This document shows positions 1-35,501 of a DNA stretch of 64,000 nt, piece by piece. The translations under genes were made by a program, and so were the position numbers. The stretch covers positions 2,394,152 to 2,458,151 of the forward strand of contig NW_002060944.1 of NCBI RefSeq assembly GCF_000150275.1, in the 5' to 3' direction. Under the pieces are notes generated by a model that did no database searches, had not been told where the DNA came from, and saw nothing but the letters and a program-made list of their open reading frames with translations. Within the stretch, counting starts at the first letter, position 1; each line of letters starts with the position of its first letter. This stretch comes from Trichoplax adhaerens. Its lineage: Eukaryota; Animalia; Placozoa.

Positions 1-3000
1 TAAGAAATATAATATTAACAAGATAATTCAGAAGTTGAAAATCAAGATAGTACGGTACATACCTCTTCAGAATACTTGTCAATATTTTGAACAAGTTGAA
101 CCCATTTTAGTTTGATAGTTGAAACTGTATCTTTGACATCAAGCAAATCAATATCTAAATCCAATCGAAACATATCCACTCTGTAATTAATAAAATCATA
201 TCTCTGCGTATTGATAGCGTAAAGAATTACCTGAGCGGGAAGCAGCAGCATCAATTCGACAAACAACTTTAAATATCTCTAATAAAGCTATTGATAGAAA
301 GGAGATAATTTAGGATCCTTGTGGAAAAATCAAGTGGTTGGATATGGCTAAGTACCTCTAATGAACAATAATCCTTTATTGCACTGGACGATTTCTTGTA
401 ATATTTCATATTTTTTCGTCGACAGCAGGACATCAATTCCATTTTGTACATCTTGTAAAGCTTTTTCAAGGCAGCTATGCCATTTATTGAAAATAGTGTC
501 TGTGGGCTATCAGATACAAGAAAGTTAAATTCTGAGTAGTTCTATATACATATATCATTTAAAAAAACATTAAATCAGAATAGCTAAGAAGTTCACCATA
601 CATGTTTACTTTTTACCTCAGCATCTATGGATAACGCTCGATATCGATCAATATCATAGCTAGTTTCAATACAGACATCACTAGTCTTCCCTGCAGCCGT
701 TATTAGGGTTTGACTCTGAAATTTCTGAGTGTCAGCAGTCGATCCGGGCTGCAAGATATCAAGGACACTATCAGAACCAATTTCATTTAAATCTCCGCCA
801 ACGTCTGGAAGGTTACTTGTAAACTACATAGAAGTATAAGCAACATCGTAACTTCCGTGTAAATTCATTTATGATTTAAATCCAAAAGGAGTTACATTAC
901 GATTGAAATACCGTATAATCGCCAAGGTTATTGGAATCTAAATGTTTGAGGTTGAAAGTATTTTCTTCTTCTAGAGATTGAAAATTACGGACAAAGTTAC
1001 TACAGTCCATATATTTTAATCTGATCTTGTCCCAAATACTAGCATTGCCAGCACTAATGCTGCTACTATTTATTATTTTACACTCATTACCGAAATGGTT
1101 TACATTCTTGAATTTGCCATCCTTCGCAAGATCAACGCTAGTTACGGTAAATGTAGAAAAATCTGACCATTCCTCCGACTGTTTATCTGGTTTCGTAGTT
1201 TCTTGATTTTGATTTAAGGAATTTGACACAGAACTTGCCTTAAAATTATCTTTGGCCTTTTCCGACATAGCAGTAAATTCTTTATTAGATTTGATATTGG
1301 TTGGAAGGTTCGCATTAAATGAAGCTGTAGTAGCTGAATTGAACTCTCCAAAATCATCAAATTCATTCGTATCGGTAACTGGGACATTCTTAGGGTTTTT
1401 AAGGCTATCTTCTTTACTAGGCGACTGTTCATTTACATGCTTAAGAATAGCATAAGGATCATATGATAAAGCTGCAGATTTCTTGGTTTCGATCTTATTA
1501 GGATCATATAAGAGTTCATTGTGGATTTGATTAGATTTCGAGCTCTCAGTGGTAACTTGCCAATCAGAGATAGATGCATCGATTGCACTAAAATTACTAA
1601 TTCCAAGTATAGGTTGCTTGTCCGGTGCAGGAGTAGGCTTGAAATTGTCTTGGTGTTCCTGATTAACACTGTTAGATAGTAAAGGAAGAAATACCGGTAT
1701 TAATAGTTATAATCTTCTCATTGTTCTAAAGATTACATACCTAGAATCACTCATCAAATTATATTCTCCTTGATTCTTAGGTGTTAATGATGGATCGTTG
1801 TCAAAGTGTTTGAAGGCACCATAATCATCATCTATATCCTCAGATGTAGGTTCTTGGAAAGTAAACTGGGATTTATTATCAGGTTTCACAGTTATTTCTC
1901 GAAAGATACTGTATTTATCGTTCGCTGTAGTTGAGGATTCGCTAGGCTGCGATTGGAAATCAGATATAGGTGTCGAAAAGGCTTGCCAATTCTTAGTTTC
2001 AATATTTTTTGTGAAAACGGTAGGCTCAATACCAGGCTGCAGGTCTGCTTCGGGATTGTCTGTAGCGTTATACTTTGGTAATTGAAACGATGGTAACGCA
2101 GTTTCACCCTTAGTACGCTCGCTTGAGGCTGTTTCAGTGGTTAGAATGTCTATACAAAACAGTATATCATTATTCTCTAATGCGAAAACGCAAAGAATAA
2201 TCGTGACATTATCTTATACAAGCTCGAAGATACTTTAGTCATACCATTATCCAGCTTAATTTTAGGAATGGGAGCTGATGAACAAGTCTTAAACGAAGAC
2301 ATCAATTGATCAATTTCGCAGCCAGCCTAAGTTGAAGAGAAGTTTTATACACGTGCACATTGGTTGTAATTCAGTAAAATAGAAATTTTAAATTAGATAT
2401 CTATAACATCTCATAAAGGCAAAACAGTTACTTGAGCTAAAGCTACTAGACCAAGAGCTAGATATAATTCCTGCCGTTTAAGGGTACCAGGTTGCTCACG
2501 GTTCGATGTTTCCCAGATTTTATATAACGTTTTCTTGTTAACACCGGAAGATAGTAGAATCGATTTAATCTTTGTAGTGGTAACATCACCATTGGGAGCT
2601 GCAACCACTTCATAAACTCTCTTATACAACTGTGGAATTTCTGAATCTTGCAAGCACCAACTTGGATACGTGAAATTAATTTCTGTGTGATTATCTAGCG
2701 CGCCAGCAGCTCTGGAGACGGTATTATTGATACCTAACAAACTTTCATTCTTTATCGTAGACGTAATGGAACTTTTTTGACTCTTAGCCACAGTACTTGA
2801 AATTACTTCTGGAAACTTTCCATTCTTGTCAGATATGACTTGCTGCGTTAGAGAAGTTTTTGCAAGTGATTGCTTAGTATACTTCGTCAGCGAATCATTA
2901 TCGGATTTTGATTGGGAAATTACGGTAAATGATCCTTCAGGATATTTACTCTCAGCAATTGAAGCTATTTGGCAGGGTGTCTGTTCATGAGAAAGTTGAT

Positions 3001-26119: not shown

Positions 26120-29100
26120 ATGGTAAGTATTTCGGACTTATATAAACATTTCATTATCACAGAGTTAACGAACGATTGTGAAATTACTGTAGTACTAAAA
26201 TTACAATATTATCGAGATTAATAGCCATTAGTTGTGGAGTCAATTTTTTTGGCCGTAATTAATAAATCGCCATCATGTTTTGATAAATAAAAATAAAATT
26301 TCTTAATTTATGTAGTCAAGCTAATTTAAGCTTTGCATCCAACTGTAGCGCACATTAATAATTCCGATGGTGATCAAGGATTTAACTTCAATGCTAAACC
26401 CGTAGAACTACAATTGATAATTTAATGATAATGCAAGAATCGACAATAAACATAAATTAAATTAAAACTCAAGAAATTGATTGTAATTGGCTAAATTACC
26501 AATATAGTATTGCGTCACCGGTTCGCCTCTCATGAATCTTGTTTAATCGTTCTGATAGTTATAATTTATGTTATAAGGTTAATATTTAGCTATCTCTGCA
26601 GTTGTTATAAATTAGTAAAATGTTTACATCACATCCTTATCGCTTTGTTGAAGTAATACATAGACTAGTAGTGTTCTAAAGTTTTTATGTATCTAAGATT
26701 TCAACTAACACTTCGGATGCCTTCAGTGATAGGACCGGCGACAGGATCTTAGATTTTGTCGAATTATTGGTTACTCGCTTGCATTATTTGTTTGTGTATT
26801 TATTAATTCAAATACTATATAACATCTCTTAATAAATTCCTTTTACACATATAGAAACTCGAATCATTACCTACATATCCAATTCAATCTATGGTGGCGT
26901 ATTTGTTAGCTGCTATTGTTGCTGTATGCATTATAGTATACTTGTTAGGATGTATTTGGTGTCGACGTAAAGAAATGAGCGCAATTGATGCAGCTGAACT
27001 ATCAGCTCTAGTTACAAGCAGGAAAATGGCTAAAAGATATTATCGCATTAAAAGATCAAAACAAGAAGTCAAGAAATTATCTTTAGATTTTCCTTCCTTG
27101 GATAATCCTCAAAACAAGACAGTAAAAACAGATAAGATTAATTATAATTCAACTTCTTGGTCAGCTCGTGGTCGGCATAATGGTGTATTACATCAGCATC
27201 ATTTAAGTGATAGCGAGATACCGGTGACTGAATTATCATCGACCGTACAGACTTCTAATTTGGGCTCAGGTACTAATTTGCCGAGGGTGCTACAGAGAAG
27301 TTATAGCGCTGATTTAAACTTGAAAGAAGCGCAATCAACTCGAGAAGAATTAAATAAAATTTTTCAAATAAAAAGCAAAATGCTAGTTAAACAGCTGAGC
27401 AAGCGAGGACCATCGAAGGTATGCTAAATTAGGAATTGATAATTTTAACAATTAGAATTATGAAACACACAGGTATAACATTATTAGAATTATTTACTAT
27501 TACGTATGTACAGTGTACAGTAAGATAGTTGAAACGATAAGCAGTTACCTAGACGTACTACACGCAGTGTTAAGATGAGATCATGTAGTGGATTTACTAA
27601 GATAAGAGTATGATACGGTATTGCGGATATAACGCGGCATAATGTGTGGCCTCTTAGACTGTAGTTAGTATTTAAAAGGCAGTAGATCTTAAGTAAAGGC
27701 AGAATTAGTAAGCTTACCAGGTGGAGTATATCTGCGTCAATTTACCCCCATCGTTAACGTCTATGCAGCGAACACAACGTTTACTACATAATTTAATGGA
27801 AAAGCTTGAAGTTTTTGAAAAGATTGCATAATACGTATTACAGAATAAAAATAACATTACCATTCGTATAATTAGCGATGATAAGTAATTGTAAGAATCT
27901 ACTTTGCCTAGGCTAACACCCTACCCAAAAATTATAAGGATTTATCAGTCAGTGGATCCATCCAGTTTACACTCAAGTATAATGAAACAGAGCAAACTTT
28001 ATTCGTAAACGTGGTTAGCATTCTTAATCTGCTTGAGAAAGAGCACAAGAATTTGTGTGATCCATTTGTTATGATTCAAATTTTGCCTCAAGACGGTGAT
28101 ACCTTGACAGGAGTCACAAAAATCAAGCGCAAGACTATTCAACCTGTATTTAATACAACGTTTTGCTTTAAAGGAACAGTAAGAGATCTTAAAAGGAAAT
28201 CAATAGAATTTTTAGTTTTAGATTACAACAAACAAAAACCACACAAAATTTTGGGTCAAGTTTTATTTCCTTTGGGTTTCTATGCCTTCAAAGAAGAATT
28301 ATCATTGCATTGGAAACGACTGGGAGTATGTCCTAAGGTAATGAATAAGTAGATAATTTTGCTTTAAATAAAATAAAATGTATTTAAGTTCCTGTTTAAC
28401 TTCCGAATATTTTCTTAAAAAGACATCTTATTGATCAAAGACAACCTACAAAATTGAATTCTGTTGCTTTGTAGTTAAGAGTTATTGCTACTTCGAAGCT
28501 ATGTTCTAATGATAAAGATTAAACTTGTATATTGTACGGTAACTTTAGATATTAATATTTCTACATACTCACCATAAATCAATATGAATTGGAATATAAG
28601 ATAGATTATGTAAAGGCTGTTTATGCTAGTACTTGTATATAATGATACTGCACAACTGTAAATCGACAATATACTCCTATTTCCAATGTTAAATTATTGT
28701 TTCATTATTGCATAGGAATTTCCGAGCCCTGGCGAAATACAGTTATCTCTTAGACACGTGCCATCAGAGGCAAATGATGAGGAATTAATCGTCGTTGTTC
28801 ACCAAGCAAGAAATTTGTTACCAATGGATATCAATACCAGCTTATCGGGTAAAGCACGCATTAATAGGGCGGATGCAGCATTTACGCCGACATCTATTAC
28901 AAAAAAACGTCTTGTATTAATTAGAAAACTCGTATATTCATTATATTCAATCTCGATAAAAATGCACGTATTTTAATACTTTCTCAGTGTCATATGTAAA
29001 ATTATGCTAAAAATTTCATAAATATTGGACTATAAGGGTGTGCTTTATTTTTATCTAACCAACATTATAATATTCATACGCTGTTGTAGACGCTCTTGTG

Positions 29101-29406
29101 GAAATCACTATTAATACGTCCAGAATACAGACACAGAAAAGAAAAACACAAACCGAAAGGCGATCTTTGAATCCCATCTATGAAGAAACCTTCCATTTTA
29201 AGGTGTCATCTATGGAATTGGCGAGTGCAACGATTAGATTTGATGTTATACATGATCAAGCCCCTATTGAATATTATACCATTGGTTACATTATTATGGA
29301 AGGGAGTCCATCTATTGGAAAGGATATCCAAGGGCCCTTCTTCTTGCATTCCCTTCAGTCAACTGAAATCAGTAAGATTTGGTTTCCCTTGAACATACAC
29401 GTATGA
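26120..29406 (+). CDS. Synaptotagmin-family protein (short lumenal N-terminus, TM, linker, C2A, C2B), probably Ca2+-independent
   Basis: Inferred exons: ATG|gtaagt (26120-26122), 26698-26769, 26855-27418, 27912-28337, ~28717-28847, ~29090-29406. TM MVAYLLAAIVAVCIIVYLLGCIWC followed by RRK. C2A GSIQFTLKY...CDPFVMIQILP...TKIKRKTIQPVFNTTF; C2B GEIQLSLRH...VVHQARNLLPMD...KRKTQTERRSLNPIYEETFHF. Confidence 0.85.
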
Positions 29407-30266
29407 TGCCGTTTCGTTATGGTGTGATGAACAAGGCTACCTATATTTTAGATAATAATTTCTCGTATTTATGCCGCCCATATTGCCTCAAATTATAATT
29501 ATAATTATCGATGGGGCAATTATTTAAAATTATGAAAGTGATTTAGGATCCGCCTACTTGGGCGTGGCGACCACAATTATAGAATCTTACGGAACTATTA
29601 CATATATTACGAAGGTATAAGAAATTATCTCTGGGTGTCTTATTATTAATACAGGATGTTTCGATCCTTTACTCATATATTAATGTTAAATATTATCGTA
29701 ATTTAAAACTGTTCCAAAATTTTGTAAAAAGCTGCCTACTAACATTTTTAGGCCAGCACTAACACTATGCATATTTACTGTGTTACAAGCAATATTTATA
29801 ACCACCCTATGAGAATTAAATAAGCCTAATACCTAATGCAATGAGGTAATACTGCATTATATGTGCGTCATGGGAGAAAATTTAGAAAAAATTCAAATCA
29901 ATGCGTTTAAAGAAATGTGCAGGAAACATATAAAACCACTTTTACAACATGGTACTTGTTTAATTAGCTATTTGTTATCTGCTAAATAAACAATCGCTAT
30001 TCTATATAATTTCAAGGCTGCACAAAATTTATTTCAGTATTAAAAAGCGGCCAAGTTATACACAGATATATAGTCAATTGTAAATGGTTAGGCAATCTAG
30101 GTATCATTTATTGATGGTAGTATAGAAAGAGGCAAAGGAATGTACCAGGGTAGATTAAATCAGAAGTAAAGATCTGACTTTGCAACCGAAGTACTAATTA
30201 TTTGTGGATTTGTAATATATGAGAAGTTTCATAAAAGTAGCATCATCATTATTGCTAGTATTATTT

Positions 30267-31812
30267 TTAGCTTTGATTGTTGGTAGCTTTTGGAATCCAT
30301 CCTTTCCTTTGAGGAATACCAACTTGCAGGGATTCTACCCAATCACCAGTTTTCGCGAAGTGAAGTAGTATATCGAACACTGACGTTCAATTTATGTTAA
30401 AAACGCGAGGAATTGAGTCTCTTTAAAACTTTGATTTTATTCATGTTAACGAAACTGATTCATACCTTGATTGATCGATAAGACCTGATTGTATGTTCCT
30501 TTTTCAGCTTTCATCATGTACTCCGGGATTGGTAAGCGGCATGTAGCGACTTCACATTGCATTCCATAATGCAGTGATATGCGCTTAAAGGTAGAAATAA
30601 TAAACGTGTGTTATACCTCTCTCACCAGTAACTGCAGGTGCAAAAGTACTACCGCTACCATATATTTTAACATACTTTACGAATGCTTTCATCAACGATG
30701 CCACCTAGAACATATACTTTACTTGAGTCAATTTTTCTTAATACTATTAGTGGAATATATTGATATCAAGTTAGAATCAGTTCAAAAAAGCATATTACGG
30801 CACATGTTTAATTCCATAAAGGCAGTAATTATCCGTTACAGTACAGGCTACTTAAATATGCAGTCTTCCCTAATACTAGCTATGAGTTACCATTCTTTGA
30901 GTCAGGTGACATAACAACAATCTCTTCCGGAGGAAATAACTCTAAAACACTTTCGGTAGTTACATCAATCTATTTTCACACACGTATAATTAACAGGTTT
31001 AGGAGATTAAGGGCTACAATTTCTAATTTTATAGCTTACGTACGATGTCCGTTATATTTAGTTATTCCATTTTATTTAAATATATAAAAAACCTTATAAT
31101 TTTGGAATCCATGGTGAAATTCCGTGCATCGCTGATACAATTCATCTTCTTGTCCAAATCTTGTAAAATAGATATGCCAAGGATCCTCTGCGATGCAATT
31201 AGAACCATATAGTCTACCAACCTGATTGCATAACTTAGATATTTCCTGAAATTGATGTTAATGATTTTAATGACTTTTCAAAACAAGTTTCCTAAAACAT
31301 CATTAGAGATATGTAAATATCGAAAGAAAAAAGTAAAGTAAAATAGTGGATACCTTGTTAGTCATACCCTCAGTTAACCCCATGTCGATAACAATTCTTT
31401 GACCACTACACATAGCGGTACGTAATCTTCCATCTCTTAATATGTGCCGCTGCCTTTTCGTAATATAATCTAAGTATGTAGTTATATACGAATAAGTGAT
31501 ACTACCGTACGAACACATTTGAGTCTGACGACAGAAACAATTTTGGATCCTAAACGAAACTATACGACGAAAAAATATCGAGAAGCTTATACTTGATCAT
31601 ACCGTCGGTAGTTTCTCTAAGTGGTTGATCTAGTTTTTTTAGCTTTTTCTTTTCCCGCTCTTGTTGCTTTTTAAAAGTCAGTTTAATCTGCAGTTGTAAT
31701 GCATTACAATAATTATATTATGTACAACTATCATTTCTCGTCATAGAAGATGCATATGCGCAAAACTGACTTTCATTTGCTTCCGTTTCTTCTCTCGTTT
31801 CGTACCAGACAT
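30267..31812 (-). CDS. TRMT10B: Trm10 SPOUT tRNA purine-9 N1-methyltransferase, TRMT10B-like (C-terminal half of the putative fusion)
   Basis: Spliced translation: RIVIDMG...MTNKEISKLCNQVGRLYGSN...HIYFT...VVMSPDS...VYVLGGIVDESIRK...CRLPIPEYM...VLSINQVFDILL...DWVESLQVGIPQRKG, stop TAA at 30267-30269. Confidence 0.88.
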
Positions 31813-31923
31813 CTAATTTTTAACAGAATAAGCGGTAAAGCTATTAATTTCATTAGAAATCCTAGATAATAAAGTATTACTGACTACATTATATGAACTC
31901 TACAAAATCTCTAGCAAACATAC

Positions 31924-34245
31924 CGTTGATGTTAGAGGTGATGTAAGATTTCTTAAATCGTCTATAGTTTTTATCTGACGGTAGTAAAGTTCCGTATCTA
32001 ATGGAAATAATTAGCATATGAGTTTAACTCCATGCTGTGCTAAATAGCGATTGCAATTAAATGTAATAACTATGCCAAACCAGAATGACAACGCCAAACA
32101 GGAATTGATACTGAAGCGCCATCAGTATTGCTCGATTCACTTTCTTCAACCTATTTCAATTTTATTAATGTTTCTTTAATATATTTAAGGATTAGGTCAT
32201 GAACAACAATTACAATCCAGTAAATTTTAAACGTGTCTTTTTAGCTTAGACCAACGTATAAAAGTACTTGAATTGCAAACGACCTTAATTAAATTTTCCT
32301 TCAACTTCTCAATAGCCGCAACTATCGCTTCGTAGGTCCAAGCATGATGAAGCTCTTTCTTTAGATTTATAGCTGCTTCATCATCTGTTTTATTTATACT
32401 AAATTACAACTGTTTAATTAGCTCATATCTGCGATTGTTCTAGAGCCATATTATAAATTCTATAGCCATCTACTATGTTATTACTTACTAGTTATTCCAA
32501 AGTGCATAAATATAAAGTCTAATTTTCTGTGGTGACATTGGATATTGGCGGCATAAATCTAAAAATTCTTTGCTTGTATCATATAATGATGGATTTAATC
32601 CAGTAAATAGGCCAGGATTATGCAAAATATTCACTGTAACATACATTAATTTGAAATTTAACAATAGATAGAGTAACAGTAAACCGAATTTAAGAAATTT
32701 TAAATTGATTTTGTTGGAATAATGAAATAAATATAAGAAGTTGCAATATCTACGCCAAATAAACGATAGTAAAGTTTCTCACGAAATATCTACCATGTTT
32801 AATTAGGTATTAAAATACGAATATCAGCGCATATACTCGTATGTATTTAACTAATATTATGAGATAACGCTAATTTATAATATAACTGCGGATTTTAAGT
32901 TTATAAATATAGATCTGATTAATGATTTATGGAGCAAATTAGTACCGTGCGACATAATCCCCTGAGCGCCAGTATATTCCAGACAAAGATCAGCTTCAGC
33001 TAAAGTACTGATATCACTACAAGCAAAGACTGGAATGACCACAGAATCCCTAGAACGGGGAAGATAGAAGCCGTTTAAAAAATTATTATGCAAGTTTCAT
33101 ATCTATAAGATAGACAGTCTCTTCTTTTCCGTAGATTACTTGACAGCTTTAACAATATTCCAATCATCCAAGCGAAAACGAGGCTCTTTATGACGACAGC
33201 CGATAGATAGTAATTGACATCCGGCGCTTTCTAGACGTTTTGCATATTTTATCAGACTTGAGCTATCCTTGTCAGCTGCAATTTTAATTTTACAGGCTAC
33301 AGGCATGTTTAAATTATCTCTTAATAATGAAATCATTCTTTGTAGTAGTTGAAAGTCCTTCCCAACAGCTTGATTTAATATAGTCTTAGCTAAGGAAAGA
33401 ATAAAAAATAAATAATACAGAGGCTAGGTTTTAATTTAACGGATTAATTCAACAATTGTAAATTTCATCTTTCAAATTTGATTAAGAGTTTCCAAATTTA
33501 GTAGAACTAACCATTAGTCTCAGAATGCAGGGTTAGGTCGATAGCATCGCAAAGACTGTCAACTCTTTCTGCTGCTTGTAGCATGCGGTTAGGATCTCTT
33601 GAACATAGCTACAGTAAACGTGTCATCACAACTTAATATAAAGTACTAAAATAGATGATCCTTCAAGTATTGCCAACAATCAATTTAAGGTCTACGAAAT
33701 ATAAATTGAACATACATATACTGTACAGTAAATAGTTACACGTGCATAGTTTATAGGACACCTGTCTTACTACTATTAATTTCACCTGAACAATTAGCGG
33801 TCTATCTTGAAAGTTATTCGCATTTAAGAAATGATATTTATAGCTATCCCAGTCATTTAGGATTTCCTCTGCTTTCAATAACGGTGTATAAAATAATTGC
33901 ACATTATGGTGTCGACACAATAACCTGAAAGCAAGGTCTAATGAAAAGTATCCATCGTTAGTAAGATACCTTGATTCGCATATAGGCGAACTTAAGTTCT
34001 ATCAATTTTTAAATCGGATTATTGACGTGTTGGTATAGATAGTAATAAGATGTTGATATGCATAGCCAAATACATGTAATTGTATTACTTATACATTCAC
34101 TGATACTCCTCTTTTAGGAACGCTTGCAGATCACACCTGGTATGTGTTCCCTAGGACCCACTGCATAACGACATGCTTTTATCGTTTTTCTCCACAATTC
34201 AAATCCATTCCTGTACGGGTTGCCAATTGAGGATGATGCAGCCAT
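31924..34245 (-). CDS. DUS1L: DUS1L-like dihydrouridine synthase domain with degenerate active site (N-terminal half of the putative fusion)
   Basis: ATG at 34245. GFELWRKTI...DLAFRLLCRHHNVQLFYTPLL...DRPLIVQLCSRDP...CDAIDL...MPVACKIK...YAKRLESAGCQLL...WNIVKAVKDSVVIPVFA...TGAQGIMS...LHNPGLF, collinear with Dus1/DUS1L. Confidence 0.85.
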
Positions 34246-34903
34246 ACTTTACGAGTAAGTAGGAACTGAGGTCTTATTAAAAATTTCTGGAATAGAAAAT
34301 TATGGCCATAGGATAACTACACAATATATTTATAATTGTTAACTCAGTATTATGCCTTTGCACCTTCGTATGTTTTCGTGGAGCTAGTGATCCCTTAGAA
34401 TCATATCAAAACTACCATTCCGTCTGATTTACAGGATACCACCGCAATTCACATGTCATACATTGCCGTTGCACTTGCAAGCACGAAGGAGCAGCTACTA
34501 CTGAACTTACTTGCAGTATTAGACTGTAGTTAAAACTGTTCCTGAAAGGAGTGAGATATAGTATTGTACTGTACAGTCTAAAAAGATCTACAATACGGAC
34601 AAACAGACACACAGACATTAAAATCAATCATTCAAATCATTTTCTTTTAGCGGCCAAGATTAATTGACTACTGCAGGCTGGACCAAATTTTTGGAGAAGA
34701 ATTTTAGCTGAAGTTTTTCTCCCATCCGTTAATAGATCTCCATTCAAATTAACTATTAACCTAGTAGCGTGTACGAGCATTAATATTTACCTCATTTAGC
34801 GAATTTTCTGCATTGTCAACAGTAAGTGTACAGTAGAGTACAGTACAGTATACTTAAACTGCTAAATACTGATTCATGCGTTAGTATAGTAGGTATATCA
34901 TAT

Positions 34904-35210
34904 ACACTTGTGGTAAAGAACTAGAGCATACATAGTGCGAAGAGAGAATGAATTACATATATAGGATGGTAAAGTCCACTCCATATACTCGAATGCTAAT
35001 ATCAACCAATGATTATTTAATTACCAACAGTCAAAAGGAAGTCAACATTGATGTAAACACTTGTGACGAAGAACTTAAGCAATCACAGTGCGAAGTGAGA
35101 ATGAATTACATATGTAGGTTGATAAAGTTCACTCCACATACTCGAATGCTAATATCAGCCAGTAATTATTTAATTACCAACAGTCAAAAGGAAGTCAACA
35201 TTAATGTAAA
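34904..35210. repeat. Diverged 153-bp tandem duplication (2 copies) containing a hairpin
   Basis: atgaattacatat...actcgaatgctaatatca...attatttaattaccaacagtcaaaaggaagtcaacatt occurs at 34948 and again at 35101. Confidence 0.9.
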
Positions 35211-35501
35211 TATACGAGTATTGTCTAGTATCCGAAAATTATTATTATTATAATCATTAAATAATCAAATTTAAGCTAGTAAATTGTCTTATGTTAGATT
35301 TTTTCGACTAAATTGGCTTTTATTTGGATTGTGTAAAGTTACTGGTGTCGGTCAGCATATAATAAGAGCATGTAACAATGCAATACGTGTATATGTTATT
35401 ACAGAGAATAGTAGATCGAAAAGTGTTGAAATCGGATAAAACTATAATATACATTAAAACATTAAATTATTTATTACGTACGGCTATGTACATTACAGTA
35501 A

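What the first reader, a model, noticed from the sequence alone, without database searches (positions are those of the whole stretch)
30267..34245. Putative DUS1L-like / TRMT10B fusion: a single 17-exon, 629-aa tRNA-modification chimera
Seen in sequence: minus-strand exons 34245-34137, 33937-33786, 33608-33512, 33389-33140, 33049-32946, 32633-32489, 32398-32284, 32150-32081, 31997-31924, 31812-31771, 31687-31603, 31469-31354, 31245-31093, 30969-30891, 30743-30676, 30583-30466 and 30379-30267. They join through GT-AG introns with consistent phases into 1890 nt with no internal stop. The junction reads ...IPVWRCHS|DTELYYRQIKTIDDLRNLTSPLTST|MSGTKREKKRKQMK|IKLTFKKQQ..., with only 83- and 111-nt introns, leaving little room for a separate promoter. 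Established: DUS1 acts on the tRNA D-loop (positions 16/17) and Trm10 methylates the nearby purine 9; in humans and yeast they are separate genes. Inference: the DUS fold has been recruited as a tRNA-binding or positioning module for Trm10, loosely analogous to TRMT10C depending on the SDR5C1 dehydrogenase as a scaffold. I am not aware of this architecture having been described.
Basis: partly seen in the sequence, partly recalled or inferred. Interest (0 to 1): 0.92.

Follow-up and report, generated by a model that had tools for sequence, protein, structure and literature searches.

The report
Placozoan TRMT10B with dead DUS domain
This is a real, transcribed Trichoplax gene that joins a dihydrouridine-synthase-like domain, which has lost its catalytic residues, to an intact tRNA position-9 methyltransferase; the same two-domain layout occurs in predicted proteins of several other animal phyla, yet I found no paper describing it.

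Summary
All 17 minus-strand exons have AG/GT borders and consistent phases. They give one 629-codon frame, and spliced RNA contigs from three studies carry the exon 7-8-9-10-11 joints. One 3371-nt contig is colinear with all 17 exons.

The gene is the Trichoplax adhaerens member of the TRMT10B group of Trm10 methyltransferases, with an N-terminal paralogue of DUS1L. The layout is not unique to placozoans. Predicted Dus+Trm10 proteins exist in a sea anemone, a nemertean, an annelid, spiders, a scorpion, a sea spider and a tunicate. The DUS halves of most of them, including this one, form a clade apart from canonical DUS1L, which Trichoplax also has.

The Trichoplax DUS half keeps only 21 of 47 positions that are invariant elsewhere. 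The catalytic Cys is Ser, and NLGCPQ, HGRT and ANGNI are all altered. The Trm10 half keeps 40 of 44 conserved positions, including the catalytic Asp and Gln.

Most likely it is an active m1R9 methyltransferase with a dead DUS fold kept as a tRNA-binding module; this part is inference. None of eight literature searches, nor two DUS-evolution papers I read, described the fusion.

The joined model was never sent to search or fold tools.

The parts
34364..34491 (-). 5' UTR exon (upstream limit approximate)
   Evidence: joint 34286>34364 in X9 and X12, with 128-131 nt on the far side; depth falls to zero beyond about 34520. uATGs are present but stopped before the main ATG.
34137..34286 (-). Exon 1: 41 nt of 5' UTR plus the start ATG at 34245 and aa 1-37; carries GPREH in place of APMVD (34144-34158)
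33786..33937 (-). Exon 2, aa 37-87, DUS barrel (DRPLIVQ kept)
   Evidence: Dus 16.4 bits; joints.
33512..33608 (-). Exon 3, aa 88-120; the active-site motif NLGCPQ is replaced by TLHSET (33516-33533) and the catalytic Cys is Ser116 (33522-33524)
   Evidence: Human DUS1L C107 is the catalytic Cys (PMC11445529).
33140..33389 (-). Exon 4, aa 120-203; CKIK (33283-33294) is kept basic, and IGCRH replaces VHGRT (33190-33204)
   Evidence: (Dus 43 bits, E 4e-11).
32946..33049 (-). Exon 5, aa 203-238; ACSDI replaces ANGNI (33010-33024)
   Evidence: (Dus 19.7 bits).
32489..32633 (-). Exon 6, aa 238-286, end of the barrel and start of the helical domain (NPGLF kept)
32284..32398 (-). Exon 7, aa 286-324, DUS helical domain
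32081..32150 (-). Exon 8, aa 325-348; ends in WRCHS (32082-32096), the counterpart of the DUS1L C-terminal W-x-C-Q-P-Y motif
   Evidence: (joints on both sides in X5, X9, X12).
31924..31997 (-). Exon 9, aa 348-372, linker
   Evidence: 31997>32081 and 31812>31924.
31771..31812 (-). Exon 10, aa 373-386; begins with an ATG; start of the basic Lys/Arg-rich Trm10 N-terminal region
   Evidence: aligned with the basic region of all Trm10 relatives.
31603..31687 (-). Exon 11, aa 387-415, basic region
31354..31469 (-). Exon 12, aa 415-453, start of the SPOUT domain
   Evidence: the arithmetic of X12 record 1.
31093..31245 (-). Exon 13, aa 454-504; Gln461 (31222-31224) = SpTrm10 Q118
   Evidence: tRNA_m1G_MT 18.2 bits; 57% identity to P0137, E 2e-17.
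30891..30969 (-). Exon 14, aa 505-531 (SPDS motif)
30676..30743 (-). Exon 15, aa 531-553; SAM-binding Gly544-Gly545 (30700-30705) and catalytic Asp548 (30691-30693) = SpTrm10 D207
30466..30583 (-). Exon 16, aa 554-593 (RLPI, INQ motifs)
30267..30379 (-). Exon 17, aa 593-629 plus the TAA stop (VFDILL, PQRKG motifs)
30088..30266 (-). 3' UTR with AATAAA at 30107-30112 (end approximate)
   Evidence: signal; the X9 contig ends at 30088. The X12 contig runs on into the convergent neighbour gene.

Best explanation
The locus is one gene of Trichoplax adhaerens. It encodes a 629-residue protein and is the placozoan member of the TRMT10B group of Trm10 tRNA methyltransferases. As in several invertebrate phyla, it carries an N-terminal paralogue of dihydrouridine synthase DUS1L.

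Shown: the exon structure, the continuous frame, splicing across the domain boundary in RNA, the two domain identities, the loss of DUS catalytic and flavin-site residues, the retention of Trm10 catalytic and SAM-site residues, and the existence of homologous fusions elsewhere.

Inferred: the C-terminal SPOUT domain methylates N1 of the purine at tRNA position 9. Human TRMT10B makes m1A9 on tRNA-Asp, and the Trichoplax tRNA-Asp(GUC) gene has A9. The N-terminal DUS-like barrel and helical domain probably no longer bind FMN or reduce uridine. They are kept as a tRNA-recognition module acting in cis together with the Lys/Arg-rich linker. This is a built-in counterpart of the way TRMT10C uses the dehydrogenase SDR5C1 as a scaffold.
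For: Gene and transcript:
- The exon structure and continuous frame hold.
- One search shows the boundary joints in single contigs of three runs from three studies, and X12 record 1 is colinear with all 17 exons.
- Introns 8-10 contain no poly(A) signal.

Domains.

Family:
- P0067 (Tubulanus XP_074654537) has Dus at 252 bits and tRNA_m1G_MT at 109 bits.
- Ten more proteins carry both domains in the same order (from the lists).
- P0137 is an uninterrupted 622-aa ORF on a 2.8-kb Logan contig.
- The closest stand-alone relatives are named TRMT10B.

DUS tree:
- The window lies in a fusion-specific clade (support 100/98) apart from canonical DUS1L, including TRIADDRAFT_21776.
- Forcing it together with the Trichoplax DUS1L is rejected, p-AU 0.035.
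- Its end branch is 5.0 against a median of 0.57.

Asymmetric decay:
- The DUS half keeps 21 of 47 invariant positions; Cys is Ser116, Asn is Thr113, His is Gly183 and NGN is CSD.
- The five invariant basic residues stay basic.
- The Trm10 half keeps 40 of 44 positions conserved at 90% or more, including Q461, G544/G545 and D548.

Substrate: tRNA-Asp(GUC) of this genome has A9 and U16.
Against: - There is no protein-level or activity evidence.
- Contigs cannot show transcript starts or ends, so a Trm10-only isoform starting near the ATG of exon 10 is not excluded.
- From my own knowledge, not tested here: in related flavoenzymes (class 2 dihydroorotate dehydrogenases) Ser replaces the catalytic Cys, so Cys-to-Ser alone does not prove inactivity.
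- The long DUS branch could reflect decay rather than a new role.
- The four exonic differences seen in the runs include three non-synonymous ones (Q133L, C435S, F483L against I139I). That is far too few to show selection either way.
- tRNA binding by the DUS half is inferred only.
- The TRMT10B assignment rests on the names of closest relatives and on a tree without TRMT10A or TRMT10C sequences.
Confidence: 0.62

Rival explanations
1. Truly bifunctional enzyme: the DUS half is still an active reductase, with Ser116 acting as the proton donor, and the protein installs both dihydrouridine in the D-loop and m1R9.
For: The other members of the fusion clade (Tubulanus, Lamellibrachia, spiders, Nymphon, Centruroides) keep every DUS motif and score 221-252 bits on Pfam Dus, so bifunctionality is plausible for the family. 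Lys153, Arg185 and Gln87 are kept in the window. Ser serves as catalytic residue in some related flavoenzymes (my knowledge).
Against: 26 of 47 invariant positions have changed. They include the Asn and Gly of NLGCPQ, the His and Gly of HGRT, all three residues of the NGN motif and the Met of APM. The end branch is about 9 times the median. Exon-wise Dus scores sum to about 92 bits against 221-252 for intact relatives.
Confidence: 0.12
2. Two functional products: the fused mRNA is a read-through or conjoined form, and the working methyltransferase is mainly made from a shorter transcript, or from internal initiation at Met373 (the first codon of exon 10). The DUS-like part would be a decaying relic.
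For: Exon 10 begins exactly with ATG at a phase-0 boundary. The DUS half is highly diverged. Contigs cannot show starts. Stand-alone TRMT10B models exist in many animals.
Against: 372 upstream codons stay open across nine exons (chance 3e-13). All splice sites are intact and used. No contig in X9 or X12 starts at exon 10; X9's contig break lies inside exons 11-12, not at the domain boundary. The fusion is conserved across phyla and in transcript-derived ORFs. The Met is not conserved at this column in relatives.
Confidence: 0.12
3. The dead DUS domain has a role unrelated to tRNA positioning, for example binding another ligand, protein or RNA class, or regulating the methyltransferase.
For: Both the placozoan and the sea-anemone copies lost the active site but keep the domain, which shows retention without saying for what. 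The Actinia copy has lost three of the five invariant basic residues.
Against: The Trichoplax copy keeps all five invariant basic positions as basic residues and keeps the helical domain with the W-x-C motif. The partner domain is a tRNA enzyme. The closest precedent, TRMT10C with SDR5C1, is tRNA scaffolding (my knowledge).
Confidence: 0.1

Closest known systems
Human TRMT10B (tRNA-Asp-specific m1A9 methyltransferase; PMC6800469)
   Same: The Trm10-type SPOUT domain is preceded by a Lys/Arg-rich region. The catalytic Asp, the Gln and the SAM-site Gly-Gly are conserved. The closest stand-alone relatives of the fusion family's Trm10 domain are named TRMT10B. Trichoplax tRNA-Asp has A9.
   Different: Human TRMT10B is about 316 aa with no DUS domain; here about 345 aa of DUS1L-like sequence precede it. 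Substrate and base specificity in Trichoplax are unknown.
DUS1L / yeast Dus1 (tRNA D16/D17 synthase; PMC11445529)
   Same: The Dus barrel and helical domain lie in the Dus1 family. Several exon borders are shared with the canonical Trichoplax DUS1L gene. The C-terminal W-x-C motif is present.
   Different: This is a separate paralogue clade. The catalytic Cys (human C107) is Ser, and 26 of 47 invariant positions have changed. It is fused to a methyltransferase.
Predicted Dus+Trm10 proteins of other animals, e.g. Tubulanus polymorphus XP_074654537.1 and Actinia tenebrosa UniProt A0A6P8I3S0
   Same: Same domain order and same linker type. The DUS halves cluster with the window's, and the Trm10 halves align along their whole length. 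The Actinia copy also has a degenerate DUS half (20/47; Dus 57 bits).
   Different: The protostome and tunicate-type members keep all DUS catalytic motifs. These entries carry automatic names only, and I found no functional study.
TRMT10C-SDR5C1 subcomplex of human mitochondrial RNase P
   Same: A Trm10 paralogue relies on an oxidoreductase fold as a tRNA-holding scaffold independently of its redox chemistry (my knowledge; context in PMC12630138 and PMC3874184).
   Different: There the partner is a separate Rossmann-fold protein acting in trans as a tetramer; here it is a TIM-barrel flavoenzyme fold in cis. This is an analogy only: no binding or structure was tested here.

Membership tests
Trm10 / TRMT10 (SPOUT m1R9 tRNA methyltransferases) | Trm10-type SPOUT domain recognisable by profile or alignment | tested here: met
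   Exon-wise Pfam hits are below the cut-off (18.2 and 12.7 bits). However, exons 12-17 align in order over the whole domain of more than 15 relatives (E down to 2e-17), and 40 of 44 conserved positions are kept.
Trm10 / TRMT10 (SPOUT m1R9 tRNA methyltransferases) | Catalytic Asp (SpTrm10 D207) and Gln (Q118), both essential for m1R9 activity (PMC3874184) | tested here: met
   Asp548 in GGIVDES and Gln461 in NQVGRLY. They were mapped through the 4jwh/4fmw alignments.
Trm10 / TRMT10 (SPOUT m1R9 tRNA methyltransferases) | SAM-site Gly-Gly (hTRMT10B G231/G232) | tested here: met
   Gly544-Gly545.
Trm10 / TRMT10 (SPOUT m1R9 tRNA methyltransferases) | Methylation of N1 of purine 9 in tRNA | not testable with these tools
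   This needs an enzyme assay.
TRMT10B subgroup | Groups with TRMT10B rather than TRMT10A or TRMT10C | tested here: inconclusive
   The closest stand-alone relatives are all named TRMT10B(-like). Fused and stand-alone forms interleave in the tree. No TRMT10A or TRMT10C sequences could be included, and the backbone is star-like.
Dus (dihydrouridine synthases), Dus1/DUS1L subfamily | Dus domain by profile, placed within the Dus1 family | tested here: met
   Exon 4 scores 43 bits (cut-off 20.4) and exons 2, 3 and 5 hit in order. The tree places it inside the holozoan Dus1 radiation.
Dus (dihydrouridine synthases), Dus1/DUS1L subfamily | Catalytic Cys (human DUS1L C107; E. coli DusA C114) | tested here: not met
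   Ser116 at that column.
Dus (dihydrouridine synthases), Dus1/DUS1L subfamily | Conserved flavin and active-site motifs (APM, NLGCPQ, K-I-R, HGRT, NGN) | tested here: not met
   The window has GPR, TLHSET, K-I-K, GCRH and CSD; 21 of 47 invariant positions are kept.
Dus (dihydrouridine synthases), Dus1/DUS1L subfamily | FMN binding and NADPH-dependent reduction of U16/U17 | not testable with these tools
This needs biochemistry.
Animal Dus+Trm10 fusion proteins (known only as database entries) | N-terminal Dus and C-terminal Trm10 domain on one polypeptide from one transcript | tested here: met
   One frame, spliced contigs across the boundary, and the same order in 11 relatives.
Animal Dus+Trm10 fusion proteins (known only as database entries) | DUS half belongs to the fusion-specific paralogue clade | tested here: met
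   Support is 100/98 without the Actinia copy and 99/98 with it. The alternative grouping with Trichoplax DUS1L has p-AU 0.035. Caveat: the branch is long.

The most novel reading that the evidence does not exclude
TRMT10B was, from early in animal evolution, a two-domain enzyme: a DUS1L paralogue joined to Trm10. On this reading the stand-alone vertebrate TRMT10B is a truncated descendant. In placozoans and cnidarians the reductase half has become a catalytically dead tRNA-recognition module that sets the methyltransferase's substrate choice, as a cis counterpart of SDR5C1 for TRMT10C. In protostomes the same protein would be a bifunctional enzyme acting on the D-loop and on position 9.
Probability: 0.4. 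Interest if true: 0.8.

Novelty: new variant of a known kind. Interest (0 to 1): 0.62.

Why it matters
Why animals keep a second cytosolic Trm10 (TRMT10B) with a very narrow substrate range and slow kinetics is an open question that its discoverers state themselves (PMC6800469).

If TRMT10B-type enzymes in many invertebrates are physically joined to a DUS1L paralogue, two consequences follow. First, substrate choice may originally have come from the DUS module. Second, the placozoan and cnidarian copies offer a natural experiment in which that module has lost its chemistry but is retained.

The family would also give the first natural example I am aware of that couples dihydrouridine and m1R9 enzymes in one chain. 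It would add a flavoenzyme-derived pseudoenzyme to the list of RNA-binding scaffolds. All of this can be tested with recombinant proteins and tRNA transcripts.

Tried and rejected
- **Finding the locus's own annotated protein.** I therefore could not learn whether the public T. adhaerens annotation has this locus fused or split.
- **Family lookup.** PF27710 (the newer Pfam Trm10 family, labelled TRM10_TRM10A) is not in the local library.
- **A second 'Trm10' locus.** The hit on contig C690 is a bacterial TrmD on a 1650-bp contig, not a paralogue. A Trm10 protein query found only this locus. Exon-wise search is weak, so absence of TRMT10A or TRMT10C is not shown.
- **Short-exon PDB searches.** Exon 13 alone was too short to be informative. 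Mapping was done through exon 15 and P0244 instead.
- **Region search with P0152.** It returned only 8 proteins. None of the three homologue searches listed a protein named TRMT10A or TRMT10C, so the A/B/C question is not settled by a tree.
- **ESM Atlas.** It showed no large cluster with the fused layout.
- **Artefact readings rejected.**
  - A chimeric X12 contig is unlikely, because X5 and X9 show the same joints independently.
  - A recent Trichoplax-only duplication is disfavoured (AU p 0.035).
  - A chance open frame is excluded (3e-13).
- **Shared loss with Actinia.** The overlap of lost positions is 18 (P 0.06) with only one shared new residue, so common versus independent decay is undecided.
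- It was assembled only inside local scripts from window.fa, for the frame check, alignments and trees. No structure or complex prediction was run.
Full report
**1. Observation**

The window lies on a 9.74-Mb contig of a 105.6-Mb assembly. The canonical DUS1L protein TRIADDRAFT_21776 (P0154) maps at 100% identity, in several exons, to a locus 4.5 Mb away on the same contig. The genome is therefore Trichoplax adhaerens.

Phases are consistent and the sum is 1890 nt. The only stop is the terminal TAA. The ATG at 34245 is preceded by an in-frame TAA 6 nt upstream. At 33% GC, 372 codons stay open by chance with probability about 3e-13.

Pfam finds Dus in exons 2-5; exon 4 alone scores 43 bits against a cut-off of 20.4. 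It finds tRNA_m1G_MT weakly in exons 13 and 15.

**2. Transcript evidence**

Of four runs laid on 29400-35300, X4 is unspliced and looks like DNA or nascent RNA. The other three hold spliced contigs:
- X5 is a declared random-primed RNA-seq run from study P3.
- X9 is from study P4.
- X12 is from study P5.

In each of the three, one contig carries the joints 32150>32284, 31997>32081, 31812>31924 and 31687>31771, that is exons 7-8-9-10-11. X9's contig runs from inside exon 11 to the 5' UTR, and its break lies inside the Trm10 part, not at the domain boundary. The pieces of X12's 3371-nt contig add up exactly to exons 17 to 1, plus a 5' UTR exon joined by a further intron (34286>34364).

Introns 8-10 hold no AATAAA or ATTAAA. 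The AATAAA at 30107-30112 fits the end of X9's contig at 30088. X12's contig continues into the convergent C2-domain gene downstream, so that contig alone would not prove a single transcript; the chain of splice joints does. Contigs cannot show starts or ends, so a shorter isoform is not excluded.

**3. The layout is not unique**

phmmer of exon 4 against 1.8 billion representatives gave no self hit. Among its long hits, however, P0067 carries Dus (252 bits) and tRNA_m1G_MT (109 bits). It is Tubulanus polymorphus XP_074654537.

Its full-length relatives with both domains are:
- Lamellibrachia (annelid);
- seven spiders;
- Nymphon (sea spider);
- Centruroides (scorpion);
- Phallusia (tunicate);
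- two Logan ORFs, two metaclust entries and one JGI entry;
- a doubtful EukProt entry, UC4_evm2s566.

A search from a crinoid TRMT10B-like protein added Actinia tenebrosa A0A6P8I3S0, which is named TRMT10B. My own Pfam scan confirmed the N-Dus, C-Trm10 order in all ten proteins tested. P0137 is an uninterrupted 622-aa ORF on a 2.8-kb contig of an SRA run, which fits a spliced mRNA in an animal.

The window's exons align in order with these proteins along both halves. This includes the W-x-C motif at the exon 8/9 border and the basic linker of exons 10-11.

**4. What kind of Trm10**

The Trm10 half of P0152 finds, outside the fusions, only proteins named TRMT10B(-like), at 46-52% identity. In a Trm10-domain tree, fused and stand-alone proteins interleave, with at least 8 changes of label. 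Lamellibrachia (fused) is sister to Ridgeia (stand-alone model) with 100/100 support. Tachypleus (stand-alone isoform) sits inside the chelicerate fusions with 97/87 support.

They therefore appear to be one orthologous group. The backbone is unresolved, and I had no TRMT10A or TRMT10C sequences for the tree.

**5. What kind of DUS**

In a careful tree the window's DUS half falls in a clade with the nemertean, annelid and chelicerate fusions (support 100/98). This clade is separate from the canonical animal DUS1L clade (98/95), which contains the sponge, cnidarian and Trichoplax DUS1L. Adding the Actinia fusion puts it in the same fusion clade (99/98); both are long branches.

Forcing the window together with Trichoplax DUS1L costs 9.0 log-likelihood units (p-AU 0.035). 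Several exon borders are shared with the canonical gene, which fits an old DNA-level duplication.

The tunicate-type fusions sit inside the canonical clade. That points to a second fusion or a misplacement; I did not resolve which.

**6. Asymmetric decay**

| Feature | DUS half | Trm10 half |
|---|---|---|
| Conserved positions kept in the window | 21 of 47 invariant in 24 fungal-to-mammalian Dus1 sequences | 40 of 44 conserved at 90% or more, within the normal range |
| End branch against the tree's median | 5.0 against 0.57 | 2.1 against 0.65 |

In the DUS half, APMVD is GPREH, NLGCPQ is TLHSET, VHGRT is IGCRH and ANGNI is ACSDI. Ser116 stands at the catalytic Cys, which is C107 in human DUS1L (PMC11445529). 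Every other sequence keeps at least 91% of the invariant positions, except the Actinia fusion at 20 of 47. The five invariant basic residues remain basic in the window: R41, R45, K153, K155 and R185.

In the Trm10 half the retained positions include:
- Gln461 and Asp548, the counterparts of SpTrm10 Q118 and D207, which are essential for activity (PMC3874184; mapping);
- Gly544/Gly545, the counterparts of hTRMT10B G231/G232 (PMC6800469).

**7. How it most likely works**

Shown: one mRNA, one frame, a degenerate DUS domain and an intact Trm10 domain.

Inferred: the protein is an m1R9 tRNA methyltransferase. The dead DUS barrel and helical domain, with the basic linker, hold or select the tRNA.

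Human TRMT10B makes m1A9 on tRNA-Asp only. The Trichoplax tRNA-Asp(GUC) gene has U8, A9 and U16, and both A9 and G9 tRNAs exist in the genome.

Members with intact DUS motifs may be bifunctional. The rivals are residual reductase activity, a separate Trm10-only product, or a non-tRNA role for the dead domain. Each gets about 0.1.

**8. Comparison and novelty**

Both domain families are well known. The fused layout is present in public predicted proteomes under automatic names. None of eight searches of the held library, nor two DUS-evolution papers that I read, describes it. That library lacks most subscription journals.

I rate the finding a new variant of a known kind, of moderate to high interest to tRNA-modification specialists.

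**9. Limits**

Noticed in passing
L001 = G000:C690:1-1650 (hit at 10-150, minus strand): The only other PF01746 hit in the assembly translates to a typical bacterial TrmD (…ILTLFPEMYPGPL…PYGGGGGM…) on a 1650-bp contig. It is probably a bacterial contaminant or symbiont contig rather than an animal gene.
   Followed up: partly
window 28011-29406 (+): This is the convergent downstream neighbour, with two C2-domain exons (54 and 37 bits). X12's RNA contig runs from the Trm10 3' end straight into this region, which suggests overlapping 3' ends or read-through.
   Followed up: partly
window 34286-34520 (-): The 5' UTR holds a 77-nt intron (34287-34363) and several upstream ATGs, all terminated before the main start.
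   Followed up: partly
P0135, P0137, P0138 (Phallusia-type fusions): These fusions have DUS halves that group inside the canonical DUS1L clade rather than the fusion-specific clade. That suggests a second, independent fusion or a tree artefact.
   Followed up: no
P0336 (Actinia tenebrosa A0A6P8I3S0): The sea-anemone fusion also has a degenerate DUS half: no NLGC motif, the NGN motif lost, and Dus at only 57 bits. It differs from the Trichoplax copy at most changed positions, with only one shared new residue.
   Followed up: partly
window 32771-33389 in run X5: One X5 contig keeps introns 4 and 5 but has introns 2 and 3 removed. This is partly processed pre-mRNA in a random-primed library.
   Followed up: no
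L059 = G000:C1382:362224-362413: ARAGORN calls a 92-nt 'tRNA-Pyl (cta)' here. It is probably an intron-containing or odd tRNA gene rather than a true suppressor.
   Followed up: no
L043 = G000:C1414:2400868-2401039 (tRNA at 51-123): The Trichoplax tRNA-Asp(GUC) gene has U8, A9 and U16. The base that human TRMT10B methylates is therefore present.
   Followed up: yes
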